A stretch of DNA of 64,000 bases from Ophelia neglecta (taxonomy: Eukaryota), in contig OZ260667.1 in the NCBI GenBank assembly GCA_965285935.1, forward strand, positions 63,674,001 through 63,738,000. Direction: 5' to 3'. The position numbers were made by a program, and so were the translations under genes. Below the pieces are notes generated by a model that had not been told where the DNA came from, did not search any database, and saw only the letters and a list, made by a program, of their open reading frames with translations. This document shows, in pieces, positions 7,781 through 59,393 of this stretch. Numbering within the stretch: position 1 is the first letter of the stretch; every line of letters begins with the position of its first letter.

Positions 7781-10700
7781 ATTATAGCTAATAATATAGT
7801 AAAATAGTGAATTTTTATCAGTCTAGCTGGACTAATCAAGATGACGTCGTTCTCCTGCACATTAATGAAAAGTGATTCTTATAACAAGTTTTGTCGACGG
7901 CGACAGGAATCATTCCAATTTAGTGATCAATAACAGGCCGTTTCTTATAGCTCCGACAGGATGTTAGGATTCAAAGACGGGGTGTAATATTTTAATGGCC
8001 CTTCAATCTAAGGTCCCCCGAATCCGCAACCCTAGACTCCTTAAAGGAATATTGCTGTATGTTTAATGTGATTTAGCCCAGCCAGGCCCTTTCATCTCTA
8101 TTGGATACATAATAGAACTCCCACGTTATACACCCCCTAACACTATGTGTGCACATTCCTTAAGTTACACAGCTATTTAGAAGACTATGCTAAGCCTCGT
8201 GCTATTCTGAAACTCATCTCTATCTTGAACAAATATTGCATTTCAACAAAATCAGCAACTTTAAAATAACTTTGCATAATGTATTGACTTTATCGGTCCC
8301 GCCAGACAAACGGTAAACACTACAGACGAGCAGACGAGATCATTTTACTTGATTGTATCCGCCGATTTATCTTCTTTTGAATGAGCGTGGGAAATGCAAA
8401 TAACGAGAAACTTGTTAATATGAAGCCTCACATTTCAAGGCCACTACTTTCAATTCCATTTTTTTCCCCTCAACAATTTATAAGATTCACCTTGCCTTGC
8501 ACATCTTGAAGTTCTTTCATCGACGTATAAAGAGTATTGAATTTATCCGCGCATGCCAGAGAGAACTACATACTCTATAGGTTAACAGCGTGGGGGGGGG
8601 GGGGGGGGTCTTCTGACCCTTGGATCTGCCTATTTAATTGACGATGATATCGGATGTTAAGGTTTATTTATCAGTTACTTGGGATTACCCACTTGTCCTT
8701 CATTGAGACAAGCGATTTCTCAATTCGGTCAACATCTAAAGTCCCAGTTTTAGATGTTCTAAATTAATTTATCGGATTTCAGAAAATAGCTTGTTCCTTA
8801 TTTCACGATAAATCCAGAGATGTCCGTGATATGGATATTTTCAAATTTGGAACTGGCGCCCCACTAACCATCTCCCCAAAATATCCGTCTCCGCCCCACC
8901 ACGTTTATTTGCGTTTATGTTACGTATGACTGAATTTCAATGCATTAGTTTTCACTGAATGTTGTTCTTCTTTCACATGTTGACATTAATGCGAGCTCCC
9001 CTCGCGAGGCTTTGCCCATCACATATTGTGCATAAATTCACACCAAGGGATGAAACACTGCGGAGGAACGATTTTGCTTCGCATAACATCGGGTACCTCA
9101 TAAAATGGACGCCAAAAAGGTAATTTTATCGTTATCGTTTAGACTCTTTACCATAATATCATAAAGCAGATGATAGTGCATGTATTCAATGTTCCAAAGT
9201 CGATTTCAATGCAGAAGCTATCTACGTCAGTGAATTTCTTGCTACATATATGATTTATGTGTGTCTCGATCAGAGGCAAAACCTGCTTAGGTTAAAAGTA
9301 ATCGGTTATGTGTGTATGGAATACATGAATCATAAATGTATACAGCCATAAATGCGTACTTTCAGGGGACATGGGGGGGGGGCACTCAAGGGACGCTAGA
9401 CCCTGTCGACATTGGATAGGCACAGGGGGAAGCATAGCTAAATGAAAACCAAATGAATGGTAGGCCCTATAAGACATATGGAGAGAAAATGATTTCTGAA
9501 GTGATTAATACGAATGGAAAAAGTAACTCGGCTCATTGAAAAATATAAATCCAATCCGCCTGTTATCTATAGTTTGGATTTCGGATTTGGGACGTCATTG
9601 ACTAGATGGGATTGCTAGAATGAAAACTTTTCCAAGTGCCACTTCTCCGCGTTCCCTTAATGATCCACGTACAAATATCTATATAACAATCACAGTAAAA
9701 ACTTTTCTGATTAAATGTCATTCTATTTCCGAATATGAAACAACAATCATTACAACATTGAACAGCGGAGTAATTGCCAAATCTAGATATCTAGGTTAAA
9801 TGACCATTTTTCACAGCCAAAACTCGTTTTATAATAAGCAATCAACACAAATACCGACTGCACGTGATGACATTATTTACCTTTAATGAACAATGACTTG
9901 TTCATCGTGCTTGCAGCTGCAAATAAGCAACTAAATGCAACGATCCCAGGGAACATCGGGCTTTTTCGTGTAAGGTTATCCTAACTTGTAAATGCTTTGT
10001 AGATAATAAGCATAAGGTAAGCGCATGGGCAATTTCCTATATGCTCATATCGGGCCCTTACAAAACATTTACACATAACACAAGCGTGTCAATTTGTTTT
10101 AATTCAAGGATTGTTAAAGAGAAAGGCAGCAGAGGGGGTAAGGGGGGGGGGGCTATGCCGCGTCCGCCCCTTGCGCCCGCCCTGCCGCCTAGGTACACCA
10201 TTAACAAACTGGAACCACCACAGAAACAAATAACTTTTCAAATCAAAATTCTAGGTAAATACTCTTCTCATTCTTGTCATTTATAGATAAAATGAAAGAG
10301 GCAAATCATAAGATGCGAAGATTATCTTAAATCATATTAACAGGGGGAGTACTCTAATTTTTATTTGGGTCCACATAAAAGTTACACAATTGAATTGAAA
10401 TGCATACGAGCTAGGGTGTACATAATATTGAATAAAAATCGTAGACGTAGGCTAACCGTAATAAATAAAATGATTGATTCGTGAGAGTAGATAAGCCTAA
10501 TAGAAAGTTTTAAAAAGAATAATATTATTATGCTATGTGCTTAGATACGATTTGCGGTTTTTTTTATGTTACCTGCGGCCTCTACATCACAGGGAGTCAA
10601 TAATTATATCAGAATCCGAGGAACATGTAGACAAAACTCTTCCAAAATAGAAGCATTTATGAAAGTATCAGCCCTGCTACAAGTAAAATTAAGCCATTTT

Positions 10701-13384: not shown

Positions 13385-13940
13385 CTTCTCCGGGGGAAGG
13401 GAACTAGGAGGTTGTAACTCACCCTTTCTCTACTGGTGACGGGGACTAGTAGGTAAGCATACACCCTATCTCTACCGGGGAGGGGACTAGGAGGTAAGAA
13501 TACACCCTATCTCTACCGGGGACGGGGACTAGGAGGAAAGAATACATCCTATCTCTACCCGGGAGGGGGACTGGGAGGTAAGAATACACTCTATCTCTAC
13601 CGGGGAGGGGACTAGGAGGTAAGAATACACTCTATCTCTACCGGGGAGGGGGACTAGGAGGTTAGACCCCACCCTATTTCTACCGGGGAGAGGGCTAGGA
13701 GGGAAGAATACACCCTATCTCTACCGGGGAGGCGCACTAGGAGGTTAGACCCTACCCTATCTCTACCGGGGAGGGGGACTAGTAGGTAAGAATACACCCT
13801 ATCTCTACCGGGGAGGGGGACTAGGAGGTAAGAATACACCCTATCCCTACCGGGGAGGGGGACTAGGAGGTAAGAATACACCCTTTCTCTACCGGGGAGG
13901 GGGACTAGTAGGCAAGAATACACTCTATCTCTACCGAGGA
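13385..13940. repeat. G-rich minisatellite, 41-42 bp unit, ~13 copies
   Basis: Unit ccggggagggggactaggaggtaagaatacaccctatctcta; it explains the 14-aa repeat in ORF 13654..14151. Confidence 0.95.
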
Positions 13941-16900
13941 GGCAACCCATCCCTTGGGGGGGGGGGGGGGTGAGTAGGGTTGCCACGGGTGCTAGGGCCG
14001 ATTTCCTGTGGTGGTGGAGGGAGGGCGGCCACAGGGGCCATGACCCATCCTCTGAGGGTGGGGGGGGGGGAGAACGAGAGGGAATGTGGACACCAGGATT
14101 CGCCCCTTGTTGGGTGTGCGGGGGGGGGGAATAAAAAATGACCACAACCAATTGATTTGCCTAAATAGAAGGGCCAGTATAGTATGGCTAGCATTTGTGT
14201 GAAATAAAAAAAAACGAACTCTAAAAACTGTGATATGTCAGGTTTGCTGTAAGCATGACCGACATTTAGCAAAGGGGCCTTTTTAATAATATGCAATTGG
14301 TTCCAATGTGTCATTCGAATGGGCCAGCTTGAGTCAGCATTCATGAGTCAGCTAATAATACATTTCAACTGTAATAAAATCCGTGTTTTCACATTCCCAT
14401 CACAAACGGATTAAAAAACAAGAAAATGTTTGATTACATTCCAGGACGTGTGTGCAGCATGCCGTGACGATCATGAGGGGTTAGGACACGTGATAAACAG
14501 AGTTAGTGTTAACAAAAAGGACGCTGATGGTTGTACGCCCCTCCATTACGCTTGTTATAGAGGTCATGTGGATTGCTGTCGTGTTTTGATAGACCACGGT
14601 GCATCCGTTAATGTCTAAGAGTACCAAGGGGTGACACCCCTTTACCGGGCGAGTGCAGATGGCCATGTTGACTGTTGTAAACTTTTACTGGAGAATGGCG
14701 CCTCCATCGATATGCAGGACAACACAGGCCAGACTTCCCTATTTACAGCAAGTCTTAATGGCCATGTTGGCTGTTGTTCCCTTTTATTAGAGAAAGGGGC
14801 TTCATTTGTTATTCCATGTAAGACAGGTGATACTCCACTTCATGTCGCTTCTCAGATAGGTTATATAGATTGCTGTCGTGTTATGATAGAACACGGTGCA
14901 TCCGTTAATGTCCAAGAGTACCAAGGGGTGACACCTCTTTACCGGGCAAGTGCCAACGGCCATGTTGACTGTTGTAAACTTCTACTGGAGAATGGCGCCT
15001 CCATCAATATGCAGACCAACAAAGGCACGACCTCCCTGTGGACAGCTTGTTTTAACGGCCATGTTGACTGTTGTAAACTTTTACTGGAGAATGGCGCCTC
15101 CATCGATATGCAGGACAACAAAGGCGCAAGAGCCCTATACATGGCTTGTTTGAATGGCCATGTTGACTGTTGTAAACTTTTACTGGAGAATGGCGCCTCC
15201 ATCGATATGCAGACCAACACAGGGAGGACATCCCTATACAGAGCTTGTTTTAACGGCCATGTTGACTGTTGTAAACTTCTACTGGAGAAGGGGACTTCAA
15301 TTGACATTCCATGTAATATGGGTTATACTTCCCTCCAAGTCGCTTCTCAGAAAGGTCACGTTGATTGCTGTTGCTGTCTGATTGAAAATGGTGCCTCCAT
15401 AAATGTCCACAAGAAAAACACATTAACCCCTCTTTCCCTCGCTTGTGGGGGCGGCCACACTAAGTGTGTTGAGGTGTTGTTGGAGAAAGGAGCTGATCCA
15501 TCTCTAGCTGATTCAGTGCGAAATGGGCCGATAGATATTGCAAGGTCAAAGGGTCATGTGGACATTGTCAGAATATTAGAGAAATATAAGGCCAACCTGG
15601 CTGAGAGGAATAAGCGGGTCGTCGCTGATACCGCGAAAGTCTCTACATCGGCGAGTGCACCTATATCTGAATTAAAGAAACTAAAAAATGTCTTCGAGAA
15701 ATCACCTAGACCCAGCACGTCCCCTGTGGAAACAGTCATTTGTACACACACTACTCTCTGTCGACTGTTTATACAAAGCTTGGATTTGAAAGGTGAGTGA
15801 GTCAATCTAAGTCAGTGCTGTATATTAGCTATTGCATTAACTTGGGAATCAGTTGTGTTTTTTTGTTAATGGTGTAATGTAAATGAATATCAATAGTACA
15901 AAAACCTACCCATAATACTGTACTTACCTCCCAAGATGCCTACTTTAATCCACAATATGACGTGTGTTTCTGTGAGAGTTGCCACCGTGAGAGAGGAGAC
16001 AATCTCTACTACACCCGTGGACAACCTCCCAAGGACTACGGTCTTCCCATAGGATGGTTCAAGTTCGGACTGGTGTGAGTATCCCATATGTTTTTCCTCC
16101 TATATGGCATTACTAACACAATGAATACATTTCTAACAAGCAGGATTATTATTTATTTCAGAGCCCCAGCTAAAGCAGCTGGTGAGGATGCCTTTACGAA
16201 GTGGCACGTCGCCTTTCACGGCACCCGAGTTGACTGTGTCGGACAAATTCTGAAAACTGGTGACCTTCTGATGCCAGGCAAGGATACCTGTATTCACACC
16301 CGTTGACTTATTTCAATAAGCAATACTTAATAGCATCCATATATTGCAATCAATTTCTTTGTGTAATGAAAATTATTAATACCAACAAAACGTTTATAGT
16401 TTTCTGAATAAACGACAAAAAAGTGCAAAAATATCTAGGTATATGAATTTAGCCAGTTAATCATATCAATTACAATAAATCCGTAGACAAGCGTTAGTTA
16501 TAGGAATAATAAGAGTTTACCTGGGAGATTTCTGTTTAATACAAGACTCAGCATTCGTTTCATTTCAGGCGATTTCACACCTACTGGGGCCTTTTTAAAA
16601 CCGCCATCTAACCACTATGACGAGGAAAATCCTAAACTGAAGCCACCTCCCGGTCATGACGTCAACAAGATTTACCTATCTCCGTCTATTAGATATTCTG
16701 GGCTAGAAGTGTATGCCCCCAAATCAACGTAAGTATGCCTGATACTAGTATATAGAAAATACAGTGCAATATGGAGTTGAAGCATCTACTCTGATAACAA
16801 CTTTAACACTATCAACCATTTATGCAACTAAAGGGGGAACTGTCCTCTGTAGAGGGCTGTAGTGTGTAATACCTTTAACTTTAAGAGTAAATTACGTTCG

Positions 16901-18079
16901 GTAAAACGATTGTTGTGATAAACTTCAATATTGAGCTATAGCAATTACAATTTCAACATTTTCAACCCTGAATATCTGTAATTAAAGGTCAATCTGTAGG
17001 GATGATAGGGTTATTTACAATAGTTTAAGGTTATTGACAAGTTGAAATAGTGCATTGTGTGGTCCCTTATGCTGTTTGGCCTTCCAATAGATCCAAGGTA
17101 AATTCAGGACCATGGTTTAGTTTTATAAGCAGTAGGGAAATCAAGTTGTATATGGAATGTTGACGGTTCAGTAGGGACATCAAACTGTCTGCTGACTGTT
17201 TAAGGGTCCAGGTGGATTATGACAGAATTTATAATTTTGCGATTTTGCGATTCGACTGGAAGTAAATACAATGTGAGGGTTGCATTCCAAGTCCATATAA
17301 GACCAGTGCCTGCTATTCGTATTTAAATTATTAAACTTTGTTTATTTATTGTTGACAGTTCAGTAAGGAAATTTTTTACGGTTCAGTTAGGAAATCAAGC
17401 CATCTATTTATTGTTGACGGTTTCTGGTGAATTGAGCCACGTTTTATTGATTTGTTCTTCTTGATCCATGATTTCGTTTTGCATGACGGCCAACAATAAC
17501 CGTTATTATTACCATTTTGACAATCTTCAACCTCACATCAGGTACAAAGATCCGAGAACTGGACGTATTTACAATGCGAGGGTGGCGTTCCAAGTTCGAA
17601 TAGCGCCAGGAACATACGACGTAGGTGACCAGACCATTGGAGCCAAAACTCAGATCGACCCCAAGTTTCCTAATAGTGAACTGGAGTGGTCCACCAAGAG
17701 AAGAGGGGTCACCATTCTAGTTGGGCTCCTTGTCAAGATGGAAAACCCGATGGCGGGCCTTTCATTTCTTGACAAGAGCTCACTTGGAACTACTATACCA
17801 CAAAATATAAAATTTTGAAGAATTTAGTTTTTATTACCCTATAGCACGTATGAGCAAAGAAACACAAGCAAAAATAACTGTTTTAATTGTCTGTATGAAT
17901 ATAAATGTATCCCTATAGCTTGTAATATGTCTCATCTGTATTACTATGTTGCTTGTATTCCATAGTGGATATATATGTGCTATCACGTATAATGAGAAGA
18001 AAGTGAATGTAGCTAGACATTTTTTATAGTTCATGCATTTTCCAAAACATAAGAATGTAACTACAAATTAACTTGTGCT

Positions 18080-19732: not shown

Positions 19733-22700
19733 GTAACTATGCCTTCACTACTCTCAAGCCAACTCTATCCATATTTATAATATGCTAATGAGAATGTTGG
19801 GCGATGTCTGCCCCCATTGAAGAAAGTCAAATAACTGTGAATTTGTAATTTGAAATTAATCATAAGGTGGGCATTGTTACTCATTTAAAAGAATATGACT
19901 ACTGCTTTATGCCAGGTCATTGCAGGTGCCCTGTACTGCTTTCGCTCTATCACCAGTTATTAAATCACAGTGTGTATCATGTTTATATTACATTGAAACA
20001 AAATCAAAATTTCTGATGACTGTGAATACCGTTTTGTAAGAAACGATTTATGGTTCAGTGGTTGGTTGGTTTATAACACCTTAATAAGAAGGTTAGCAGA
20101 TCAACTTAAGACCGTCCCTTTGTTCTTATTCCGGAAATTGCTGTCTATTTTTCATTATAGAGAGAATACTTTGGATTCCTGATGAATTTAAACAGAAGTA
20201 GCAGCACTAACTATCGATATCTCGCTGTATATAATTTATCTGAGCTACTATTATTTGATCTGCACACTCTACCAACTCATCATATTATCTAACTTTATAT
20301 TCTACCGACACATCATACTACTCTCTGACCTGTATACTGTACCCATGCTTCATACTACAATGTAACCTGTATAATGTACCCACACCTTATACTGCTATCT
20401 GATCTGCATACTTTTATCCAAACCTTACACTAGGAGCTAGTAACCCAAATATCAATGGCATAAAAAGAATACCTTACCTTCCAAGGAGTATACAATTGCT
20501 GCACCTTTTCTTTAAAACAAGGGTCAATTTGCTATAATACTGGGCTTCACATACACAAATGGAAACAGATATGCTCTAAGCATGGTGCTTGAAAATTTCG
20601 TAACAAATTTTAGTTTTTACTTTTATTTGTTATTACATTACGCTGCAGCAAATTGGCCAGTGACTTTAAAGAGAAGGCTGAATTGTATCTCTAATAATAC
20701 AATGACTCACAAGATAACTCACATTACCCGTTACTTAAGGTCATAATTATTAAAGCATTATTATCAGACTCAGATTTTATTTTGACCAACACAAAATAAT
20801 ATACAAACATTCTATGAAAAAGTAAAAAAAAAGTAAATAATTACTTAATGTGTACAAATCATAAGTAGTCAAATAATTAAATAATAGGTCAGGGAGACCA
20901 TTTTAAGATCAGAATTGATCGCTATCAAATGGCCACCCTTAAGAAAATTTAAGTTGAAAATGAAAAATGAAAAATGAAAGGTCAATTTATAATCAACAAT
21001 ATTTAAAGATCCAAGAGCATGAATAACAGATAAATTACATTAAATTAAATTAAATTGACTTAAAATAACCCGCGGCCTTAAACAATCACATCCAGACAAA
21101 CATTATATATAAATAAACAGTAAATTATATAACTGATAACAAGAGAGCAGATTAAAGGAACAGACATTACATACAGGAAATAACATAATGAGCAGAACAA
21201 CATCTCACGGAAACCTCAGAGAACAATGCAGGAACAAAAACACAGCGCCAACACCGTGTCACACGCCTGCGACTTCGATATGGTCAGCACCGACCCAATG
21301 ACGTACAAGTACGCGAAGCGCCCACCCGCCAACACCCACAGCAACCACAAACTGGTTACTATAGGCAGTAGCGGATAGACCCCACGCGCACCCGCGCAAC
21401 GACGGGCCAAAAAAGTCAAGAGCCAAAAACATCGGAACTCATACATAAGTGTGTGCCCATTAAAGGGATTAAACACTGGAAATAACAAGCATAGCCCCTC
21501 CAATTCATTAGAGTTTATATTAGGAGTCAAGCACTCATCTCTTGACAGCTATAACAATCAAAAACAATGCAGTCCTCGGAGTAGTCATTAAGAAAATAAT
21601 GTTTAATATAACAGGAGTAACCTTTTAGACTGTGTGTCTCTACCTTACTTACAATAAATTTTGGCGTTTCATTTAATAATATGGAGACATTTTGTCTTAT
21701 ACATCTCTCCGCAAACTTGTGAGCCACCCTTGGGACATAGATATCTTTACTCTGCCTAGTGTTATACGTGTGTATTTCGCTGCGAGGAACTATCCGAAAA
21801 TGATCCCCAAAATAAGTTGGAAGATCTTTGTGTTTAAATTTATAATAAAACTTGAAAATATGTTGTTTGTGTAAGTCCTCCGCCTTAAGGAGTTAGAATG
21901 CCTCAAATAGTGGCTCTGAATGTGCATAAAAGCTACTTCTTGTTATAATCCTCACAGCCATTTTCTGTAGTTAATAAACTCTATCTGCTACGTTACCCCA
22001 TGCAAGTATACAATAATTTAAGTGAGGTAAAATTTGGGTTGAGTAAATCATTTTTAGGATGTTGAGGGGAACCATATTCTTTATTCTGTTGATTATGCCC
22101 AAAGACCTTGATATTTCATTGCAAATTTTACTGGTATGACCCTTCCAGATAAGGTGTTTGTCCAGAGTAAGGCCCAGAAAGTCAAACTCCTCAATGTAAT
22201 CTATTGGTACGCCGTTAATCTGTATAAAAGGTACAGATATTTTTTTCTGTGGCGTGTGAAGATTGAATTTCGTTTTCTTAATATTTAGAGATAATTTGTT
22301 TATTTTTAACCATTCAATAACTTTACCCAATTCATTGTTCAAGTTAATATCTAGAGGAGAAGCGTGTTGAAATGTGTGTAGTGTGCTAATGAGCGAGGAG
22401 TCATCTGCGTAAATAATTGATTTAAACATGTTGGTTGCATAACAAATATCATTCATATAAATTATGAATAGGAGGGGTCCTAAAATAGAGCCTTGAGGTA
22501 CACCAGTAGTTATTGGTAACTAACTGACAGATCCATGAATATACTAAGGGGGATTTTGCCATTATCCATTTCTTGTACAATCCGGTCCACCATTTCAAGT
22601 GATGCCAATTCAGTACTGTGCTTTTCCCTAAAACCATATTGGCTATTGTAAAATAATTTGTTTTTATCAAAATAAGAGTAAATTTGATTATAAATAACCT

Positions 22701-23229
22701 CTTCAAAAAGTTTTGAAATTGCACAGAAACAGGCCTGTAGTTGTTTAAATTTGCATCATCATCTTTCTTGAATAAAGGGATTATCTTTCCGACTTTTAGG
22801 TTGTCAGGAAAATGCCAGACATAAGTGACTAATCAATTATGCGTGCTAAGGCAGGGCTCAATTCCACACTCATTGATTTCCAAACTTTAACTGATAGGCC
22901 ATCAACACCGCAACTTGTTTTTGGTTTCAATTTATTTATAATGTTCTCTACGGTTTAATTATTAATTAGTTCAATTTTGAAAAGAGAATTGGGTGGCGCT
23001 CTTAGATAATCAGAAAATATTTATTGGTGTCAGATGTGATTTTTTTCGGCTAATTTAGGTCCAATTCCAGTAAAGAATTCATTGAAGCTTTTTGCAATAT
23101 CATTTTTGTTAGAGACTAGTTTACCATCAATATTTAAAGTTTGTTGGTGATCCTTTATATTATGAGACTTGTTTAATACCTCCTTTATTATTTTCCATGT
23201 GTTCTTCATATCATTAGCATGCTTAGTAA

Positions 23230-25154
23230 CGGTCCGACGATTCACCGTACCGGGACCGTGCCGGGCGAAAACACCGTACCGGGACCGTACCGGGCGACTA
23301 ATCACCGATTCGGGCAACGTTGGATGTACCCAAGACCACAACATCACTGGAAAAGGCAGGAAGCCTCCAGAATGATAGCTTCTCCCGTCGGGATAGTCCT
23401 CGCTCGTGCAGTGTTACCCTAACAGGGTATCTACTTGGGCGGGCTAGCCGACGGTGCCACTGGTATAGGTACCCTGCACAGAAGGCGAAATGCTCAGCAC
23501 CGTAGTCACGGGGGGCATATTTCTTAGCCTTTCCGACTGCATGATCGTAGTCAGCCTTGCTCATGCTTTCAGATGCCAAATGCTGATCTAACTTCTCGCA
23601 AAACTCCATTTCGCGGGTCTCGTGCATTAACGGCAGGCCGCGCGTCTTCAAGCTGTTCAGGTAGTGTTTCAGCGCTCTGAAAAGGAGCTTCGCCAGTACA
23701 TTCGCAGGGTGATCAGGTGATGAGTAGTGGTCGGCCATGGTGAGGTGATTGAACTGACCTTCTAGATTTCTGACTACCCTGTTTTATGTGTGCCTGTCTT
23801 GACTGTTAGGCGGGTCTGGATTATGATTGCATTTCATTTTGCGCACACACAATAAAGCTGTCAAGAAGCCACAGCCATCTTTCAACCACTTCAAAGAATA
23901 TCACGAAGCCACTACGCTTTGAACAGAAGCTACAACGCCTCTCAGGGAAGCTACTTTCGCTTCGTTGACCTCGATCACAGAAATTTATGAAGCCACTTCC
24001 AGTTTCTCGGAAGCCACTACCAGCCTTCAATCTTTAACTTGACCAACCAACTTTATGAAGAATGAAGCTAGTCTATTTAAAAGTTAACTGAGCAAGAAAC
24101 AGATTCTTGGTCTGCTGCTGATATTAAAAACACAGCAACTAACCACTAATCTGCTCATCGCAATTTTGCGACCCATGAACACACAATGTGGAAGAATACT
24201 ATTGTGCAATTTTTCTGAACATTGCGATCACCCAGCTTTTTCATGCTGATAATTTCATCGATCAAAGGCTAATTTCTGGTCATCTATAAACACTCTACAA
24301 GCTGTATGTACATGCTACTAAAACTAGTTTGGTGATCTGGTAATCAAAAAATGAAATCATATACAGACTGTTTTTTACGGGCAGCTCTGTAACTAAAAAC
24401 TCTACTCACTATACATGTATATACATTTTGGTTCTGAGTGTTCACCTATGGAGAAATTATTCTTGTCCCAAATTATTATCAGTTAATCTGTACTGTTATG
24501 TAAAAGTAGGTGAGTCATGGTAATTTAAGCTTGGTGCCAAAGAGATTTATCGTGAAAGCTGGGTGTGCATATTATACTTACAGCAGTATTTATCAAATAT
24601 GAGTAAAGATATACATGTATGCGCTTGGCACAGGCATCTGAAAATAAACTAAACATATATAAAGTATTTTACTGAATAACAACTAAATTATTTTTTGGAT
24701 ATTTTTACTTTATTTGACATGATAAGACAGAATTAATATATTAACATATGTACATATATACATTTTGCCCCTGGTACATAGACTAGCCTTCTACCTGAGT
24801 TCTGACAACCTAGGGAATCAATTGTCACTGGTCTGAAGATGAGCCTTCACCACCAGAAATCTGCACCTTCAATTTTTGCGAATCACATGTAAAGCGCACC
24901 CGTTTTCTAATAGATGTTGTCTTATCTGACCTTGGTCGTCTCCTCTGGCCCTTCTTTTTCCCGCCACGGCTGAGAAATGTTTGAATAATTCAACTTTGGA
25001 TGGAAGGTGTCGACTTGAAGTCGCACCTTTCGCTAGACAAACATGCACTCTTGTGAATTGAAATTTAACAAATTAATCTATTTAATCCAGGAGTTTGGCA
25101 ATGCTCGAAGGCAATGTCCTTTTTTGCAATTTATTTTTCAGTTTGTCAGTTTGT
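23230..25154 (-). mobile_element. Unclassified 1.9 kb insertion with 8-bp target-site duplication CTTAGTAA, containing ORF 23298-23738
   Basis: cttagtaa occurs at 23222-23229 and 25155-25162. Removing the insert and one copy restores LINE ORF2 AKRIYYHTCFTKHANDMKNTW. No terminal inverted repeats. Confidence 0.8.
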
Positions 25155-26732
25155 CTTAGTAAAGCATGTGTGATAATATATTCTCTTGGCGATCCTAATA
25201 TTGCTCTTCAATAGTATTGTATGTTTTGAGGCTAATTTTGCAATTATCGTAGTTAACTGAAGTATACGGTGTTGCCCTTGCCTCTTTATAAAGCTTATCT
25301 CTAAATGAAATTGACCTTATGATACCCGCCGTGATCCACTTTGTCTTTTTATGTCTGTGTTTTTTTAATTTAACTGTCTTAGGAGCCAAAAATGTATCAT
25401 AGGCAGTCTTTATCACCGTCTCTAATTTGTTATAGTTGACATTTGGATCTGTTTCCTGAGAAGCATTAATTTCCACAATAGTGTTAGACATTATTATTGT
25501 CTCCCTGAAATTTTGAATGGCTGCAGGACTTGACCGATTTATCTTTATATATTTTGGTACAGATGGGAAGGTGAAGAAATTGTCCAAGACCGTAAAACAT
25601 GGTTGGTGATCTGAAATATTGTTATTCAAAATACCACTCCTCATATTCTCTGTGCGTGTACTTAGCTTACAAAAACAATTGTCAATGAGAGTACCACGTT
25701 TCTTAGAGAAACGAGTTGGTAGAGTTATTTTAGGGAAGAAACTATTAGTGGTCATCTCATCAATGAATTCGCTTATCATCGTATTTACATTTATGTCTAA
25801 TAAATTTATATTAAAATCTCCAGCTATTATTGCCTCGGTGTTTGACTTATCTAGTTTCTTTAGAACTGGGGATATTTATTCCCAGAACCTCCGATAGTTG
25901 TCGTAGACATTTCTAGGTGGTCGATAAATGTTCCCCAGTATTAAGTTTTTTTGATAATTATGTCCCATTACCTCGATAAGGGAGACCCTCCTACACAGTA
26001 TTATCCTTAACTAAATCCATCAGTTTAAATCTTAACCCATCACGTAAGTAAATTGCTAGACCTCCATGTTTGGAGAAAGTTTTTCCTCGGTGAATTAGCT
26101 GATAACCCTCTATTTGTAGTAACGATATGTCAGAAGCGCTATCCAACCAAGTCTCTTGTAGGCAAATTGCCTCAAAGAAACAATTTTCCAACCTGAATGT
26201 TTCTATCAAAATCACCAATTGTTCAAATTTTGCATGAATACTTTGAATATTCAGGGTAAGTACAGGAAAAACACTCCTAGTAACCGACATCAAATCGATG
26301 AGTTGATTATCATCCAAATAAGATAATTGAAAAATACCAGGTTCATTCTCAGAATTATTATCGTCATCGTTAATATTGTCACTCAAAATGCTCAAAAGTG
26401 AATTCCCCACAATGCCCCCGAAAGCGCTCAAAACATCATTATCCGCCATTATAGTGCACCAAGTTATTAAAGCGCTTAGTCATGGTTCCCAACTGAGTAT
26501 GCCCACTGTCATAGATTATGTGTAGATGAAACAAAAGTGCGTTTGTGCCGCCATGTACATGCAATTTACGCAAGCCACAAGTCAACATACATTTAAGGAT
26601 ATCATCTTTTAAGTTGATAACATAGTATTTTGTCCAGCCCGAAACAATCATGCAAAGAAAGTCAAAAAGGAAAAAAATCATTCCATACATACCACCGCTC
26701 CAAAATCATAACCCGAAGTTCATGCTTAGGGA

Positions 26733-32250: not shown

Positions 32251-33233
32251 TATCTGTCTAACTTTGATTCCTGTCGCGCTTTCTTTAAGCTGTGAACTAA
32301 CACAGTTTAGGTAGTAGTTCGGTTGTGATGTTTAGACTTAGTCCGCTCAGCGATCCCCCCTCCCCCTCCCGTTTAGTGAGGTAATACATTGCATTAATAA
32401 GGCTAGGTTAACTTCGAGTACAATCAAAAAAAACATTGCTATATACAACGATCGAAACTCCACCAGCATTGGAGGTTACGATAGGTTTGTAATCGCCTTT
32501 CAGCACCACCGCGGTAATAGAATTCAAAAAAGGAGGCTGGTAATCTTTGTCCAGTTCCGAAATATTGTAAAATTTAGAAACAGGTTGGGAAAAAGCTAAG
32601 GAACAACAGAAACATACGCCATGTGGGTTGGGTTGGGGGGAAAATGTTGCTTACGCCCCTCCCTCCATCGTGACCTCCCCTCGCCAGGACCCCCCCCCCC
32701 CCTAAATCCGCAAATGAAATACGGATTGGAACTACCACAACAACAGATAACTTTTCAATTTATAATTACATTCAAAATAATTGTGCTATTTAGGGCAATG
32801 ATAGATAGAATAAAAGAGGCAAACCATTAGATTAAAAATATAAAAAATCACAATATAAACCGGCAGAAGACTCTAAGTTGGAGTTGGGTCCACACAATTA
32901 AAATGTACACGACCAAGGGTGTACATAGCACTGAATCAACATCAATAAAGTCCGGTATAGCCTTCACGCAGACGTATAATATATAACAAGGACTGCTTGA
33001 GAAAGTAGCTCAGAGTATTAGAGTGTTTCAAATGCAATTGTATCAATTAAACTCTTGATTTTGCATTTCATTTCACGCACAACTCAAGCTCGGGCGTACA
33101 GCGTGCCGTCAAGTGGCGATAATCAATGAAAGTCCGAAGTCTACGTTCATATCTTATCAACGAGTGTGCAAAACACGGGTTGAATCACGGCCCAGACGCG
33201 GTTGTGTATCTACTGCTGTTGTTCATTCTTAAA

Positions 33234-36200
33234 ATGGCCGCCACAAAGGTATGCTTATCTTATGTGTTAATTAATATAGCTGGTAACATTATAACATAAA
33301 TGAAGGGCATTAACTCTAAGGTTGTTTTGAATGCCGTAAATGCCTAGGTCATTGAACGCCTTGCAAAAAATATGTTTTATTTACATTTAGTGTCGACTAG
33401 CAGCAAAACCTGGTTTAGGTAACCGGACCACAAGAACATTAAATACATAAATTAAACACTGTATAATAGTATATAATACTGTATAACACTGTAATACCAC
33501 AATAAGAACCTTTGTATAGGAGGGAATTAAATTGATTAAAATTAAGAACGAGGAAGGCTTTGGTCACGTCCTTATTACCACTAAATACCACACTACAATA
33601 TCTAGTGTCGATTATAATATTGTAAGTGCGCCAAGTCTAGTCTTGTCTAGTCTTGTCACGAATCCACCCGTTCTTTCTCCGGGGAAGGAAGACAGGCACC
33701 TATTTTTCACCACACATTCCCATCTGGAGACGGGGGGGGGGGGGGGGGGAGAGAGAGAGACTAAGGGCCCCGTCCTGAGGATCCACACTCCCCGGGAGTT
33801 TCATAGAGCTTGGCAAGGAAACGTGTTGAGTGTCTCCCCCTGGAGGAGGGGGGGGGGGGAAGTTGTGGGACTGAATTATAACATGTGTTTGCTATATTGA
33901 AATCGGCCAGTTCTAACTGTATAGTAATCACACAGTAAGGCATCGAGTCAACATGTACCAGAAGCTCAGTGGTCCCCCAAGAGTGCAACGGCACAAACTG
34001 ATGACTCGCCCCCCCCCCCCCCCCCCCCCCCAAATTGCCTTGCTTTATTATGAAATTTCCATCTTTCTCAGCGGAGAATAGTGGAGAATAAATCTTATGA
34101 TATGAATTCAGATTGTGGTCGACGAAGGGCTTGTGTAACGTGTCTGGGACATGATTATATTGTTATATATGTGTGGAGTTGTGTCAGCCATATTGGTTCA
34201 AAGGTTGAGGTTAGTTTCCCTGTTCAATAAGCCACAGCGATAGATGTGATACAGCGGTCTTGTGATATTAAATCAATAATGGCAAAGCCAAATTCGAATG
34301 TAAACAGACGTACCATGTAATGAACTGTCGAGCATACAGTCACCATCTATATATAAGGTAAAGTCCAGTTATTGTGCGTATCTTGTGTGCATCGTGTAAA
34401 ACCAGCCTTATTCTAAGCACGATGTTCGCATAAATAGATAGATTACCTAGTCAAATAAAACTACTGTGTGGGAGGATTAAACGATGTGCAGAAATGACTG
34501 ATTATATAACGTATCCTCTGCCTCTTCATTATTAACCGACGTTATTATATATCCTCTGCCTATTCATATTCAACCGACGTTACCACATATCCTCTGACTG
34601 TTCATTATTATTTGACGTTACCATTCATCCTTTGCATGGTCATAATTACCTGACTGTGACACTCTGCCTGTTCATAATTAACCGACATTACCATATATTC
34701 TCTGCGTGTTCATAATTAACCGACATTACCATATATTCTCTGCGTGTTCATAATTAACCGACGTTACCATATATTCTCTGTGTGTTCATAATGAACCGAC
34801 ATTACTATATATTCTCTGTGTGTTCATAATTAACCGACGTTACCATATATTCTCTGCGTGTTCATAATTAACCGACGTTACCATATATTCTCTGCGTGTT
34901 CATAATTAACCGACATTACCATATATTCTCTGCGTGTTCATAATTAACTGACGTTACCATATATTCTCTGTGTGTTCATAATTAACCGACGTTACCATAC
35001 ATCCTCTGCGTGTTCATTGTTATCCGAAGTTACCATTTATCATCTGCCTATTCATAATCAACTGACGTTACTATATATCCTCTGCCTTTTCATGATAAAC
35101 CGGCGTTACTATATATCCTCTGCCAGTTCATAATCAACGGACGTTACCATATATTCTCCGCCTGTTTAAAATTAACCGACGTTACCATTTATCATCTGCG
35201 CGTTCATTAATATATGATGTTACCATATATATTCTGCGTGTTCATAATTAACCGACGTTGCCGTTATACGTTGCGTGTTCATAATTAACCGACAGTACCA
35301 TATATCCACTGGTTGTCCATAATGTGACCAAAGATCATCTGCCGGTTTATATTTAACCGACGTTACCATATATCCTTTGCCTGTTGATAGAGCTAGGACT
35401 TTTCATTGCCAAATGGCATTTATTGAAATGGTTTGTCCGACCCGTCTACACTACCCCCTGATAGGCTCCAGTACATTTTCCCGCCCTCCCCCCCCCCCCC
35501 CCGGAGGCGTGGATAAAAGCTCATATCGATGCCAAAACTTTGCTCTGCTTTAAAGATTGATAGCTTTTATTGAACACGATTTGAAGATAATACATTTTTA
35601 TAGCCCTGAGTTATTTTTAAGACGAAAATTCGGGTTCTTAACATGTAATTTTGTGATTTTATTTCATAAATTTAACACTTTTTGTAATTTTGAGTTTTAT
35701 AAAGACAAAGTTTCGAGATCTATGTCAATAAATATCGTAATTTCGAGTGTTCATGTTAGTTTGCTCCTGACACACTAGCAGACTTCCGTAAAACGATCTT
35801 TCATCATCCTTGTAACAATCTCCTTTTTTGATATCTACAATAATGCAATGAGCACACCTATAAAACTGTCAAAGCTATTTCAGATCATTATTTGTTTACA
35901 CAAATCCTGTTCTGATGTAAGTGAGAATTTCATACCCGATATATCAATTGACATAATAAGGATTAGATCGCCTGAGGTATTCAGGCTAATTTAGCCCTAA
36001 ATATTCCGAATAAGAGAAATTCAGATATTATGAACGTGCTCAGACAAGCATCGTCGCCGTGCGTAGACTGGGAAAATTATTTTGATGCGTTTTGATAATA
36101 TGAATGTTAGTTTTCTTGAATCATAAGTCTAATACCATTGTTGTTTAATACATTTATAGTTTATATATAATGTAAATAATCAGTTACTTTCCCTAAAACG

Positions 36201-39200
36201 ATGTGCATCTTCCAGGAAGAATTTACCACACCCAGCGTGCCTAATAAATTTAATAAATAATGATAAATTAATTGTTTGGGTGTCAATTTAATTTTAGTTA
36301 CAAATGGGACCTGATGAAGAAAAAAAGCCTCATAAACTTATAACCTGTGCAGTTCTCCTCATCCCTAATCCCGTTTTTATTTCGATTATCATGGAATGCA
36401 TGTCAAACAAGCACCAAGAGCTTGCCCTCTAGATGTCACACACATTCGATTGATCACATATATCTATTGGTTCAAATCGATATAGAAAGAAGTATTTTTC
36501 AAATTTTCGTGTTTTTGTATTTTATTGTAATGTGTCATTATTAATGTATTACCAAACAAAATCTATAATACTTTAATTTCAGAGCCTCCTCCGAGCATGC
36601 CAAAGTGGCGATCTTAAAACGTTGAAGCAGGTGATAGGCAAGGGGAATGTAAATACTAAGTTCAACGACGACGATACTCCCCTCCACATCGCGTCGGCAA
36701 GAGGTCATGTCAGTTGCTGTCGTGTATTGCTAGGCCAGGGGGCCTACATTAACGCCCAGAACTGCAGAGGCGCTACCCCCCTTCGCCGAGCAAGTAACAA
36801 CCGCCATGTTGCATGTTGTAAACTTTTGCTAGAGAATGGCGCGTCTATCGATTTGCAGGACAACACAGGTCAAACCTCTCTATGGGGAGCTTGTTATAAC
36901 GGTTATGATGACTGTTGTAAACTTTTACTGGGGAATGGGGCTTCCTTTGATATAGCGCCTAAGAACGGCGCTACCCCCCTCCATGTCTCTGCCCAAGAAG
37001 GTCATGTAGGCTGCTGTCGTATTTTGATAGATAACGGCGCCTCCGTCAATAACCAGAACTGCGAAGGGGTAACACCCCTTCGTCGAGCGAGTTACAAAGG
37101 CCATGTTGACTGTTGTAAACTTTTACTGGAGAATGGCGCCTCCATTGATTTGCAGGACAACGCAGGTCAGACCGCCTTATACGCAGCTTGTTATAACGGC
37201 CATGTTGACTGTTGTAAGCTGTTACTAGAGAATGGGGCTTCCCCTGATAAAGCATCTAAAAACGGTGCTTCTCCCCTGCATGTCGCTGCCCAGGAAGGTC
37301 ATGTAGGTTGCTGTCGTATTTTGATAGACAACGGTGCCTCTGTTAACACCAAGTGCTGCGAAGGGTTAACACCCCTTCGCCGAGCTAGTAACAATGGTCA
37401 TGTTGACTGTTGTATTTATTTGCTGGAGAATGGCGCCCTCATTAATATGCAGGACAACACGGGCCGGACCTCTCTATGGGGAGCTTGTTCCAATGGCCAT
37501 GTTGAGTGTTGTAAACTTTTACTACAGAATTGGGCTTCCGTTGATATTCCAAATGTGAACGGGTTCTATCCACTCCACATAGCTTCTCAGGAAGGTCATG
37601 CAGATTGCTGTGGCTCTCTGATAGAAAATGGTGCATCCATTACTGCCCTAAGCAAAGAGGGATTAACCCCTCTTTTCCTTGCATGTAAGAGCGGTCACAT
37701 TAAATGTGTTGAGGTATTGTTGGAAAAAAGCGAAGAGCTATGCCTTGATGATTCTGTACCTATAGATACTGCAAGGTCAATGGGTCATTCCGAAATTGTT
37801 AGACTATTAGAAGAATATAAGGTCAAGGTGGGTGAAAGCAAAAAGAGACTGAAGAACCTCTCCACAATAGGACCTAACTCGAGCAAGTCCGAACTGAAAA
37901 TAGACACGTGTACAAACACCAAGCTCTGCCAGCTGTTTATTCAAAGCTTAGAGTTGAGTGGTGAGTCTATCAAACTTAATCATTGTGTTAGTTTAGCTGT
38001 GGTGTTTACTTGTTGTTCAGTAGTGTTCTGTTGTAAATGGCAAAAATAATGTAAATGAAAATCAAAATATCGTCTTAAGGTTTGGACCTATATAAGTAAA
38101 CGTAATACAATTTCTAACCTGTACTAATGTTTTTACCTCCCCAGATGCCTACTTTAATCCACAATATGACGTTTGTTTCTGTGAAAGTTGTCACCGTGAG
38201 AGAGGAGACAATCTTTACTTCACCCGTGGAAAACCTCCCAAGGACTACGGCCTTCCTATAGGATGGTTCAAGTTTGGGCTGGTGTGAGTATTCCCATTAT
38301 ATTTCTAGTCTCCTATGATATTAATGAAATGATGAATGTACCTTAAACAACAAATTTTTCAATTTTTTCAGAGCCCCAGCTAAAGCAGCAGCCGAGAGAG
38401 CATTTGATGAGTGGCATGTGGCGTTTCACGGCACTCGAGCTGAATGCGTCGGACAAATTCTGAAGACGGCTGATCTACTAATGCCAGGCAAATATACCTG
38501 CATTCATCAGTTGAATTATTACAATAATCAGTGTTAAGGATGAATAATGAATAAAATTATTAGGTATTGTTAGTAACAACAATAAAGAGTAATATAAATA
38601 GTTAAGAGCTTGTGAATTAATGAAACTAAGGGGGCATAAAAGAAAAATAAGGGATGTTAGACAGGTACAGAGCCATAGGTTTATTGAGCACATCTCTCAC
38701 TAGGAACTTGGTAAAGTTGTCTGCTACAAGCAATATGCCAGATTCCTTATTAGATATTCTAAACAAAAATATCGAAACATTTTTCTCACTTTCAGGTGAT
38801 TACACACCCGAGGGAGCCCGTCTAAAACCGCCACCCAACCACTTTGATGACGACAATCCAGCAATGACGCCACCTGCCGGTCATGACGTCAGCAAGATAT
38901 ACCTCTCTCCGTCCATCAGATATTCAGGGCTAGAAGTGTATGCCCCCAGATCAACGTTAGTGTGCCCGGTACTAGTATCTAAACAATTAAAGGCACCTAG
39001 GTGTTAATACTTTAACTAGGGGTTCATCGTCGGACAAGACGATTGGTTGATTTAAATTAGTGTTTTACGTGCTCTTGCACTGTTGTACATTACGTGTTGC
39101 CAGCCAGTTCAGGTCAGTAGTTGGTATTTTTAACCATAAGGAAATCAAAATGTCAACATAACTGGCGGTGGAGGTAGCAAATCAAGAAGTCTATTGTTTG

Positions 39201-39660
39201 TTGACGGTCCAGTCATAAAATCAAAGAGTGTGTTGATTGTTGAAGGTTAAGTAAGCATAATGAGATGTCGATTTATAGATGACAGTTCTTAGTAAATGTG
39301 GGCATTTTTTTTTCTTGTTCTTTATACACAATTTTGCAATGGCTTCTTGTAAATCATCTCCGTTATTATTTCTCGTTTCACAGATACGAAGACCCGAAAA
39401 CTGGAAGGATTTACAACGTGCAGGTTGCATTCCAAGTCCGAATAAGGCGGGGAACATACGACGTAGGGGACCAGACAGTCGGAGCCAAAGCTGAGATCGA
39501 TCCCAAGTTTCCTAACACTGAGCTGGAGTGGTCCACCAAGAGGAGAGGGGTCACCATCCTAGGTGGGCTCCTTGTCAAGATAAAAGAACCGATGGCGGCT
39601 CCTTCGTTTCGTGCACTGGGCTCACTTGCACCTACTGTACAACAAAATCTGCAATTATGA
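33234..39660 (+). CDS. Ankyrin-repeat + NEURL4-type ADP-ribosyltransferase, copy 2 (apparently intact, ~694 aa)
   Basis: Inferred exons 33234-33248 (MAATK, tentative), 36583-37960 (~12 ANK), 38145-38283, 38372-38487, 38796-38955 and 39384-39660 total 2085 nt with no stop. The last four exons have the same lengths as in copy 1 (139, 116, 160, 277 nt). AFHGT, IYLSPS and ELEW motifs are present. Confidence 0.88.
34500..35385. repeat. Minisatellite, 38 bp unit, ~23 copies
   Basis: Unit cataattaaccgacgttaccatatattctctgcgtgtt; homogeneous in the centre, degenerate at the edges. Confidence 0.95.
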
Positions 39661-57211: not shown

Positions 57212-57223
57212 TAGACTTTGAAA

Positions 57224-57974: not shown

Positions 57975-57978
57975 TAAA

Positions 57979-59100: not shown

Positions 59101-59393
59101 AATCTGTATTGTATAATAATAAAAATAGTGCGTTATATCTACATCATTGGAGTTATTGCATTAATTACCAAGGCATTGGGGGAAAGGTGAGGTATATAAA
59201 TATACAGTAAAGAGATACCTACAGTCAGTGCGCTTCCTGTTGCAACTGAGAGTATTACTTTATTCATCTTATAAATGGACAACATAAACTATGTAAAAGC
59301 ACAGAGCGGAACATAGGTATATTTAATACGTTTCCTATTGCCACTCAACGTTCAAAGGTTTCTTCACAAGAAGACTGATTCGGAATAAGAAAT

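What the first reader, a model, noticed from the sequence alone, without database searches (positions are those of the whole stretch)
14631..15300. Ankyrin repeats with a constant DNA scaffold and variable binding positions (DARPin-like cassette array)
Seen: ggccatgttgactgttgtaaactt.tactggagaatggcgcctccatc.atatgcag (GHVDCCKLLLENGASIDMQ) recurs almost verbatim within and between both genes. The hairpin and first helix vary: DNTGQTSLFTASLN, TNKGTTSLWTACFN, DNKGARALYMACLN, TNTGRTSLYRACFN; in copy 2 NCRGATPLRRASNN, DNTGQTSLWGACYN, DNAGQTALYAACYN. Known: these positions form the concave binding face of ANK arrays and are the ones randomised in DARPins. Inference: repeat shuffling or gene conversion plus diversifying selection generates new target specificities for the ART.
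Basis: partly seen in the sequence, partly recalled or inferred. Interest (0 to 1): 0.8.

Follow-up and report, generated by a model that had tools for sequence, protein, structure and literature searches.

The report
Diversifying ankyrin repeats in ANK-ART genes
Two neighbouring genes of a family with at least about 80 copies join an ankyrin-repeat array to a PARP-like enzyme domain, and one repeat class changes mainly on its predicted binding face, a pattern already known from fungal immune receptors.

Summary
Gene 1 has four 99-nt repeat units whose first 57 nt differ at 0-2 sites, while the next 42 nt (hairpin and first helix) differ at 8-14 sites.

The repeats are not one class. Both arrays follow a grammar of three unit types, alpha, beta (1-6 copies) and gamma, and only beta carries the quoted scaffold.

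The window lies in a ~1.9 Mb tandem cluster. It holds at least 79 copies of the gene's last exon, and the 18 distinct arrays sampled have 6 to at least 28 units.

Across 117 beta units, synonymous diversity is the same in scaffold (0.18) and variable part (0.20). The scaffold is therefore not specially constant as DNA. The extra differences are amino-acid changes (0.23 against 0.05).

The most variable positions are ankyrin positions 1, 3, 5, 9, 10, 13 and 14. These overlap four of the six DARPin library positions. There piN/piS is 1.8 and the maximum-likelihood omega is 3.4-4.5, against about 0.3 in the framework.

Recent in-register duplications, absent linkage and mosaic ancestry show unequal crossing-over and conversion in the germline. 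Nothing points to a somatic cassette system.

Gene 1 carries an in-frame stop codon.

The closest precedent is the highly conserved ANK repeats of fungal NLRs. The scan had already noted this ANK-ART family on other DNA of this genome.

The parts
14445..15792 (+). Gene 1, ankyrin-repeat exon. Unit order is alpha-beta-gamma-alpha-beta-beta-beta-h-d, followed by a non-repeat tail.
   Evidence: Acceptor and donor sites read; translation; Pfam Ank families at E 1e-74; unit typing.
14616..14618 (+). In-frame TAA in gene 1, where alpha units mostly have a Gln codon (Lys in a third). Gene 1 is probably a pseudogene.
   Evidence: The same stop is present in the 99.7% identical copy at C12:64.256 Mb.
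14661..14759 (+). Gene 1, beta unit 1: 57-nt scaffold plus 42-nt hairpin and helix 1.
14958..15254 (+). Gene 1, three tandem beta units (14958, 15057, 15156). This is the core of the finding.
   Evidence: Tandem repeat finder period 99, 3.4 copies.
15936..16074 (+). Gene 1, exon 2: start of the PARP-like domain, with a C-x-C...C-H motif.
   Evidence: Read. Collinear with the 267-aa homologue P0134.
16162..16277 (+). Gene 1, exon 3: WHVAFHGT motif (candidate His of the H-Y-E triad). The donor appears to be GC.
   Evidence: The same GC donor is present in gene 2.
16569..16728 (+). Gene 1, exon 4: IYLSPSIRYSG motif (candidate Tyr).
17542..17818 (+). Gene 1, last exon: ELEW motif (candidate Glu) and the stop codon.
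   Evidence: at least 150 copies in the genome.
36583..37960 (+). Gene 2, ankyrin-repeat exon, open throughout. Unit order is (alpha-beta-gamma) x3 then d. Units start at 36703+99k.
   Evidence: tandem repeat finder period 297, 2.9 copies.
38145..38283 (+). Gene 2, exon 2 of the PARP-like domain.
38372..38487 (+). Gene 2, exon 3 (HGT motif, GC donor).
38796..38955 (+). Gene 2, exon 4.
39384..39660 (+). Gene 2, last exon. It was the query for the family census and the homologue search.

Best explanation
The stretch is part of a germline multigene family that evolves by gene birth and death.

Gene structure. Each gene has one large exon encoding an ankyrin solenoid. Four short exons follow and encode a NEURL4-type, PARP-like ADP-ribosyltransferase (ART) fold.

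Array structure. The solenoid is built from 99-nt units of three classes, in the order alpha, beta (1-6 copies), then gamma or h. This order repeats and ends in a terminal unit.

How arrays change. They grow, shrink and exchange units by in-register unequal crossing-over and gene conversion, both within and between paralogues.

Selection. Purifying selection holds the outer helix and loop (the 'scaffold'). The finger-loop tip and the groove-facing side of the inner helix of beta units accumulate amino-acid changes at or above the neutral rate.

Inferred, not shown: the family offers many alternative concave binding faces to one enzymatic domain. This fits a conflict or immune-type role.

The near-identity of scaffold DNA in gene 1 is a local effect of recent homogenisation. 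It is not a property of the family.
For: Anatomy.

Family size:
- At least 106 matches to one 99-nt unit.
- At least 150 copies of the last exon, 79 of them in C12:62.53-64.45 Mb.
- 22 of 23 sampled arrays have a last-exon copy about 1.7-3.7 kb downstream on the same strand.

Grammar and size: 6 to at least 28 units per array.

Recent duplications: unit pairs with 0-3 differences at lags of 1, 2, 3, 7, 11-12 and 18 units.

Exchange:
- 243 of 276 pairs of common polymorphic sites show all four gametes, and r2 is about 0.02-0.05 beyond 10 nt.
- The nearest relative of a unit lies in another array for 150 units and in its own array for 79.
- The nine units of gene 1 have their nearest relatives in eight different paralogous arrays.

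Selection in beta units:
- piS is 0.18 in the scaffold and 0.20 in the variable part; piN is 0.05 and 0.23.
- piN/piS on the surface set is 1.8 (bootstrap over arrays 1.57-2.05). With sites chosen on one half of the data and tested on the other it is 1.65-1.87. The scaffold gives 0.27.
- Disjoint nearest-neighbour pairs give omega 2.0-5.6, P 0.0001-0.008.
- Codon maximum likelihood gives omega 3.4-4.5 on the surface set and about 0.35 on the framework. The same codons give 0.6-1.4 in alpha units and 1.1-1.9 in gamma units.

Gene 1 local effect: scaffold dS 0.04 against 0.42 in the variable part, P = 0.0002 against random sets of four beta units.

Enzyme domain:
- Homologues of the last exon end proteins that carry Neuralized, SPRY, ARM, LRR, kinase, ZU5 or GT4-conflict domains.
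- A homologue that covers all four exons folds at pLDDT 91, and all its top structural matches are PARP ART domains.

The concave face is formed by finger loops and inner helices: PMC4358367.
Against: - The surface codon set was partly chosen after seeing the data (positions 1, 9, 10).
- For the DARPin set chosen beforehand, piN/piS measured against local piS is 0.89 and nearest-pair omega is 1.0-1.4, not significant.
- Tree-based omega and its likelihood-ratio tests are inflated by the recombination shown.
- About 4 of the 18 arrays are disrupted, gene 1 among them, so part of the signal could come from decaying copies.
- No expression data, no population data, no structure of the array and no target are available.
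- Only 18 arrays of a larger family were sampled.
Confidence: 0.68

Rival explanations
1. Relaxed constraint only. The surface residues of beta repeats have no specific ligand and drift neutrally, helped by many decaying copies. The scaffold is kept only because the fold needs it.
For: - DARPin-set piN/piS is 0.89 against local piS.
- Nearest-pair omega for that set is 1.0-1.4, not significant.
- Gene 1 has a stop codon. Arrays at C12:63.545 and 64.356 Mb have frameshifts, and one at 63.409 Mb is truncated.
Against: - The bootstrap interval for surface piN/piS excludes 1 (1.57-2.05), and the cross-validated values are 1.65-1.87.
- The same pipeline gives about 1 for alpha and gamma units.
- Residue choice at hypervariable sites is narrow. 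ANK position 9 is Tyr, Trp, Phe or Leu in 115 of 117 units.
- Most arrays stay open for 400 to over 1000 codons.
Confidence: 0.22
2. A dedicated diversification system. Either somatic assembly or conversion of repeat cassettes on a constant scaffold, as in lamprey VLR genes, or mutation targeted to the variable 42 nt.
For: - Gene 1 combines near-identical scaffolds with variable parts that are old at synonymous sites.
- Polymorphisms are almost unlinked within 99 nt.
Against: - Synonymous diversity is even along the unit across the family, so there is no sign of targeted mutation.
- Every array sampled is a complete in-frame exon, and 22 of 23 have their own enzyme exons downstream. There is no incomplete gene flanked by loose cassettes.
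- The available reads showed no joints in the repeat region, but they are short contigs from one sample and carry little weight.
Confidence: 0.04
3. Assembly artefact. The repeat order and the near-identical gene copies come from mis-assembly of a hard tandem region.
For: - Several arrays are duplicated almost exactly, for example four identical 12-unit arrays and two 17-unit arrays differing at one residue.
- The family is long and repetitive.
Against: - The copy of gene 1 at C12:64.256 Mb differs at 5 sites and 2 gaps in 3.1 kb, so it is a separate locus.
- Arrays keep frame and grammar throughout.
- The statistics were computed after dropping duplicate arrays.
Confidence: 0.05

Closest known systems
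[quoted passage not shown] 2014, PMC4986451; Podospora nwd/het genes)
   Same: - Tandem repeats with a conserved framework.
- Repeat-number variation and exchange of repeats within and between paralogues.
- Positive selection at a handful of positions on the concave face (inner helix and hairpin loop) of ANK repeats.
   Different: - This is an animal-type genome.
- The partner domain is a PARP-like ART domain, with no NACHT or NB-ARC domain.
- Repeats form a three-class grammar in which only one class is expandable and hypervariable.
- Identity between repeats is lower (about 79% between the two gene 1 beta units compared by eye, against the 85% criterion).
- Variation between individuals was not tested.
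DARPin libraries (consensus ANK module with six randomised positions; review PMC9611651)
   Same: A constant framework with variable residues in the hairpin and at the end of helix 1. ANK positions 3, 5, 13 and 14 are highly variable here and position 2 moderately.
   Different: - Position 33 is invariant here.
- Positions 1, 9 (the His of TPLH) and 10 are hypervariable, whereas DARPins keep them fixed.
- Cysteine is abundant here and excluded from DARPins.
- This is natural evolution, not a designed library.
- The numbering of the six DARPin positions is from my own knowledge of the Binz/Plueckthun design. The review confirms only that there are six.
NEURL4 C-terminal ART domain (de Souza and Aravind 2012 prediction; Cardamone et al. 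2022, PMC8932523; nomenclature review PMC9027952)
   Same: - The C-terminal exons are homologous to the C-terminal domain of proteins that carry Neuralized repeats.
- A homologue covering all four exons has a PARP-like predicted fold.
- Candidate H, Y and E motifs are present in both window genes.
   Different: The N-terminal partner is an ankyrin array instead of six NHR domains, and the gene is massively amplified. Activity is unknown.
Tankyrase (ANK repeat clusters plus a PARP catalytic domain)
   Same: The same logic: an ankyrin array that recruits substrates, fused to an ART domain.
   Different: Pfam's PARP and SAM domain models do not match the four exons scanned. The ART domain belongs to the NEURL4 branch. 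Tankyrase is a conserved gene with one or two copies, not a diversifying family.
Plant NLR leucine-rich repeats and lamprey VLR cassettes
   Same: Solenoid repeats with hypervariable solvent-exposed residues. Diversity is generated by recombination among repeats.
   Different: The repeat fold differs. There is no evidence of somatic assembly here.

Membership tests
Ankyrin repeat (Pfam Ank, Ank_2) | Profile match above the curated threshold, with 33-residue periodicity. | tested here: met
   Ank E 2e-74 (gene 1) and 1.5e-89 (gene 2), 8 and 11 stretches. Exact 99-nt phasing.
Ankyrin repeat (Pfam Ank, Ank_2) | TPLH motif at the start of helix 1. | tested here: inconclusive
   Alpha and gamma units keep TPL followed by Tyr or His. 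Beta units mostly have T-S-L followed by Tyr, Trp or Phe.
DARPin-like design | Variation confined to positions 2, 3, 5, 13, 14 and 33 on an otherwise fixed module. | tested here: not met
   Entropy in beta units at those positions is 0.83, 1.33, 2.78, 2.42, 1.62 and 0.37. Positions 1, 9 and 10 reach 1.72, 1.84 and 2.04.
Fungal-NLR-type highly conserved repeats | At least 85% identity between repeats over at least 100 residues. | tested here: not met
   The window arrays alternate three classes. A by-eye comparison of two gene 1 beta units gives 7 differences in 33 residues. The window arrays have no unit pair with 3 or fewer differences; such pairs occur only in some paralogues.
Fungal-NLR-type highly conserved repeats | Variation in repeat number and exchange of repeats. 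| tested here: met
   Between paralogues: 6 to at least 28 units, recent duplications, no linkage. Variation between individuals could not be tested.
Fungal-NLR-type highly conserved repeats | Positive selection at concave-face positions. | tested here: met
   for beta units, with the caveats on recombination and on site choice.
Fungal-NLR-type highly conserved repeats | A NOD (NACHT or NB-ARC) domain in the same protein. | tested here: not met
   Only Ank-type Pfam families were found in the large exon and none in the four later exons scanned. The 5' exons were not found.
NEURL4-type ART domain | [quoted passage not shown] | tested here: met
   The last exon matches the C-terminal ends of proteins with 1-6 Neuralized domains, with whole-library E-values from 2e-15 to 9e-10.
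NEURL4-type ART domain | PARP-like ART fold. | tested here: met
   Tested on homologue P0134, which is 48-67% identical to the window exons: pLDDT 91. The top Foldseek hits are PARP4, 2, 1, 3, 16 and 14 ART domains, probability 1.0, TM about 0.35. The spliced window protein itself was not folded.
NEURL4-type ART domain | H-Y-E catalytic triad in place. | tested here: inconclusive
   HGT, Y-x-S-P-S and E-L-E-W motifs are conserved in both genes and in the family consensus. They were not mapped residue by residue onto a PARP structure.
Tankyrase | Pfam PARP catalytic domain and a SAM domain. | tested here: not met
   No Pfam match in the four post-ANK exons scanned.
VLR-like somatic cassette system | An incomplete germline gene flanked by donor cassettes. 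| tested here: not met
   Arrays are complete exons, and 22 of 23 are followed by their own enzyme exons.

The most novel reading that the evidence does not exclude
The ~1.9 Mb cluster is an animal, germline-encoded recognition repertoire. Many ANK-ART genes would each offer a different concave surface, built from expandable, positively selected beta repeats. Each surface would direct ADP-ribosylation at a different target, perhaps a pathogen or selfish-element protein. That would be an enzymatic counterpart of the diversifying repeat receptors of fungi and plants.
Probability: 0.25. Interest if true: 0.75.

Novelty: new member of a known kind. Interest (0 to 1): 0.5.

Why it matters
Repeat arrays that keep a fixed framework while varying their binding face are how several lineages build large recognition repertoires. 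Examples are plant and fungal NLRs and lamprey VLRs.

Here the same evolutionary pattern appears in an animal-type genome, joined to a PARP-like enzyme rather than to a NOD switch, and amplified to about a hundred genes. This suggests a family that could match substrates to an ADP-ribosyltransferase.

If the genes are expressed and active, the family would be a natural library of ankyrin binders with a built-in readout. It would also be a candidate invertebrate conflict or immunity system.

If they are not, it is still a clear example of unequal crossing-over acting on a three-class repeat grammar.

Tried and rejected
- **Word-indexed protein search with the gene 2 ANK exon.** It returned only generic ankyrin proteins at 26-42% identity. 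It gave no close relative and no help on the family.
- **Fetching more arrays from the genome.** The statistics therefore rest on 18 non-duplicate arrays.
- **Sequencing runs.** Only three runs were found, all from one sample and held as short contigs, with no RNA. No variant or joint was reported in the repeat region. The contigs are too short and the paralogues too similar to say anything about the TAA, repeat-number alleles or expression.
- **AlphaFold on the gene 1 ANK reading frame without an alignment.** The model reached only pLDDT 52. It is unusable, so variable sites were mapped by repeat position and the literature, not on a model.
- **ESM Atlas look-up of the last exon.** Best score 0.76, not informative.
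- **Upstream exons.** Comparing the upstream regions of genes 1 and 2 found no shared coding exon, only a conserved ~230 nt at 10210-10440 and 32727-32943. The 5' ends of the genes are unknown.
- **Partitioned codon model in IQ-TREE.** It did not report omega, so it was replaced by separate runs with scaled branch lengths.
- **Reverse-strand ORF at 14939-15307.** It is a by-product of the repeat.
- **Spliced gene model.** The exons were not joined for any search or fold. Exons were searched singly by reference, and a database homologue (P0134) stood in for the whole domain.
Full report
**What is at the coordinates.** The finding lies in the large exon of the first of two tandem paralogous genes on the + strand.

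Gene 1's exon runs from an acceptor at 14445 to a donor after 15792. Gene 2's runs from 36583 to 37960. Both exons match the Pfam ankyrin families very strongly (E 2e-74 and 1.5e-89).

At that codon, units of this class mostly have Gln.

Four short exons follow each ANK exon:
- Gene 1: 15936-16074, 16162-16277, 16569-16728, 17542-17818.
- Gene 2: 38145-38283, 38372-38487, 38796-38955, 39384-39660.

The eight exon segments scanned are open and have no Pfam match. Each was searched by reference.

**The observation.** The 24-mer that opens the quoted scaffold occurs ten times with at most 3 mismatches, against none expected by chance.

The arrays are exactly phased at 99 nt. In gene 1 the units at 14661, 14958, 15057 and 15156 differ at 0-2 of their first 57 nt and at 8-14 of the last 42 nt.

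It is weaker between the genes. Gene 2's corresponding scaffolds differ from gene 1's at 4-10 sites.

**Repeat classes.** The repeats are not one population. Cut at the Gly-His that starts the outer helix, the units fall into classes:
- alpha
- beta, which carries the quoted scaffold
- gamma, with a variant h
- a terminal unit d

Every array reads alpha, then 1-6 beta, then gamma or h. This order repeats and ends in d. Gene 1 is a-b-g-a-b-b-b-h-d. Gene 2 is (a-b-g) x3 then d, which is why the tandem repeat finder reports a 297-nt period there.

Part of the apparent variability is therefore a fixed difference between classes.

**Context.**
- One 99-nt unit has at least 106 matches in the 762 Mb assembly, nearly all in C12:62.5-64.4 Mb.
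- The last exon has at least 150 copies. Of these, 79 lie in C12:62.53-64.45 Mb and about 40 on C2.
- From the 30 loci fetched plus the window I extracted 345 units in 23 arrays, of which 18 are non-duplicate.
- Arrays have 6 to at least 28 units.
- 22 of 23 arrays are followed within about 1.7-3.7 kb by a last-exon copy on the same strand.
- About four of the 18 arrays are disrupted by a stop, frameshifts or truncation.
- Gene 1's region has a 99.74% identical copy about 568 kb away that carries the same TAA. The stop is therefore real and older than that duplication.

**Is the scaffold constant as DNA?** Not across the family. In 117 beta units, synonymous diversity is 0.18 in the 19 scaffold codons and 0.20 in the 14 hairpin and helix-1 codons. 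Non-synonymous diversity is 0.05 and 0.23.

The excess of differences in the variable part is therefore entirely amino-acid change. Nothing suggests targeted mutation or scaffold-only homogenisation as a general rule.

Gene 1 is the exception. Its four beta units have scaffold dS 0.04 but variable-part dS 0.42. Random sets of four beta units reach that contrast with P = 0.0002, which is still about 0.004 after allowing for 18 arrays. I read this as local homogenisation of the scaffold halves in that gene.

**Which positions vary.** Numbering the repeat from the hairpin Asp, so that Gly is 4, T-P-L-H is 6-9 and G-H is 15-16, beta units are hypervariable at positions 1, 3, 5, 9, 10, 13 and 14. 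Entropy there is 1.3-2.8 bits. Positions 2, 26, 32 and 12 vary moderately. Position 33 is fixed.

Finger loops and inner helices form the concave groove, and outer helices form the convex back (PMC4358367). The variable segment is therefore the groove side.

Four of the six DARPin library positions coincide. That there are six randomised positions is confirmed in PMC9611651. Their numbering is from my own knowledge. Positions 1, 9 and 10 are extra.

Residue choice at these sites is narrow. Position 9 is Tyr, Trp, Phe or Leu in 115 of 117 units.

**Selection.** Three approaches were used.

| Approach | Beta surface set (8 codons) | DARPin set (chosen beforehand) | Framework / scaffold |
|---|---|---|---|
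| Diversity ratio, bootstrap over arrays | 1.8 (1.57-2.05) | 1.37 (1.17-1.57) vs unit-wide piS; 0.89 vs local piS | 0.27 |
| Diversity ratio, sites picked on one half and tested on the other | 1.65-1.87 | not done | not done |
| Disjoint nearest-neighbour pairs | omega 2.0-5.6 (P 0.0001-0.008) | 1.0-1.4, not significant | 0.24-0.36 |
| Codon maximum likelihood, fixed topology | omega 3.4-4.5 (2dlnL 31-75) | 1.5-4.1 | about 0.35 |

The first approach is robust to recombination. With the maximum-likelihood pipeline, the same codons in alpha units give 0.6-1.4 and in gamma units 1.1-1.9. The pipeline therefore does not produce high values by itself.

Caveats:
- Three of the eight surface codons were added after seeing the data.
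- Recombination inflates the likelihood-ratio tests.

My reading is that beta-repeat groove residues evolve at or above the neutral rate inside genes that are otherwise constrained. Diversifying selection is the more likely cause and neutral drift the main rival.

**Shuffling.**
- Unit pairs with 0-3 differences occur at lags of 1, 2, 3, 7, 11-12 and 18 units within arrays. These are recent in-register duplications of single units and of blocks.
- Of 276 pairs of common polymorphic sites within the 99-nt beta unit, 243 show all four gametes, and r2 is about 0.02-0.05 beyond 10 nt.
- Scaffold and variable-part distances barely correlate (rho 0.12).
- A unit's nearest relative lies in another array twice as often as in its own (150 against 79).
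- Gene 1's nine units have their nearest relatives in eight different paralogous arrays.

This is what unequal crossing-over and short-tract conversion among paralogues produce over evolutionary time. The two window arrays themselves contain no recent internal duplication.

**The enzyme domain.** A full scan of 1.84 billion representative proteins with gene 2's last exon found 349 proteins. Many carry the match at their extreme C-terminus.

Pfam shows that those proteins carry Neuralized repeats (up to six, the NEURL4 layout), SPRY, ARM, LRR, kinase plus thioredoxin, ZU5 or a 'GT4-conflict' glycosyltransferase.

A 267-residue homologue (P0134) is collinear with all four window exons. With a 38-row alignment it folds at pLDDT 91. 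All its top Foldseek matches are PARP ART domains, with probability 1.0 and TM about 0.35.

NEURL4's C-terminal domain was predicted to be an H-Y-E type ART domain and has been reported as active (PMC8932523, PMC9027952). Candidate H, Y and E motifs are present in both window genes. I did not map them onto a structure, and activity is unknown.

This agrees with two earlier notes of this scan on the same genome (s1-732029, s1-745675).

[quoted passage not shown] Those show repeat-number polymorphism, exchange between repeats, and positive selection at five ANK positions on the concave face, in the inner helices and hairpin (PMC4986451). [quoted passage not shown] - the host is an animal-type genome;
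- the partner is an ART domain, with no NOD found;
- the repeats follow a three-class grammar in which only beta is expandable and hypervariable;
- identity between repeats is lower.

Tankyrase shares the ANK-plus-ART logic but not the domain family or the dynamics. There is no sign of a VLR-like somatic system.

**Verdict.** This is a new member of a known kind of diversifying repeat array, and its function is inferred only.

**What could not be done.** Population variation, expression, a usable structure of the array and the 5' ends of the genes all remain open.

Noticed in passing
window 14616-14618: In-frame TAA in gene 1's ankyrin exon. It is shared by a 99.7% identical copy at C12:64.256 Mb. 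Gene 1 is probably a pseudogene, although its later exons are open.
   Followed up: partly
window 16278-16283 and 38488-38493: The intron after exon 3 appears to start with GC (cag|gcaagg and cag|gcaaat) in both genes. This would be a conserved GC-AG intron. There is no transcript evidence.
   Followed up: no
window 17255-17310: A degenerate partial copy of the start of the last exon lies inside gene 1's last intron.
   Followed up: no
window 16740-16973: This intronic stretch has 20-100 times the contig depth of its surroundings, and reads run off into unrelated sequence. It is probably a dispersed repeat or small transposon.
   Followed up: no
window 13393-13942 and 34512-35323: Minisatellites lie just upstream of the two ANK exons: a 42-nt unit in 13 copies (G-rich) and a 38-nt unit in 21.6 copies.
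   Followed up: no
window 10210-10440 and 32727-32943: This is the only stretch conserved between the upstream regions of gene 1 and gene 2 (67% over 235 nt). It may be a 5' exon or a promoter.
   Followed up: no
window 43666-44949 (-) and 53551-54834 (-): Two paralogous single-exon ORFs of 427 residues. The first matches the Pfam fucosyltransferase families (GT10, E 5e-53). 181-nt direct repeats lie at 46577-46939 and 56464-56823.
   Followed up: partly
window 50294-51550 (-): A 418-residue open reading frame without any Pfam match, between the two fucosyltransferase genes.
   Followed up: no
window 21971-26449 (-) and 57218-62607 (+): Transposon remains. The first is a set of ORFs that looked like a non-LTR retroelement to me by eye; two of them had no Pfam match. 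The second is a block with a weak integrase-core match (E 1e-5, below the Pfam cut-off).
   Followed up: partly
all units, for example window 14673-14678: The repeats are unusually rich in cysteine. Almost every unit has a Cys-Cys pair in the outer helix, and beta units often have one or two more at the end of the inner helix.
   Followed up: no
C12:63409460-63412970 (L024, L025): Two copies of the same 12-unit array lie 2.3 kb apart. The first is truncated after the terminal unit. Identical 12-unit arrays also occur at 63.166 and 63.511 Mb.
   Followed up: no
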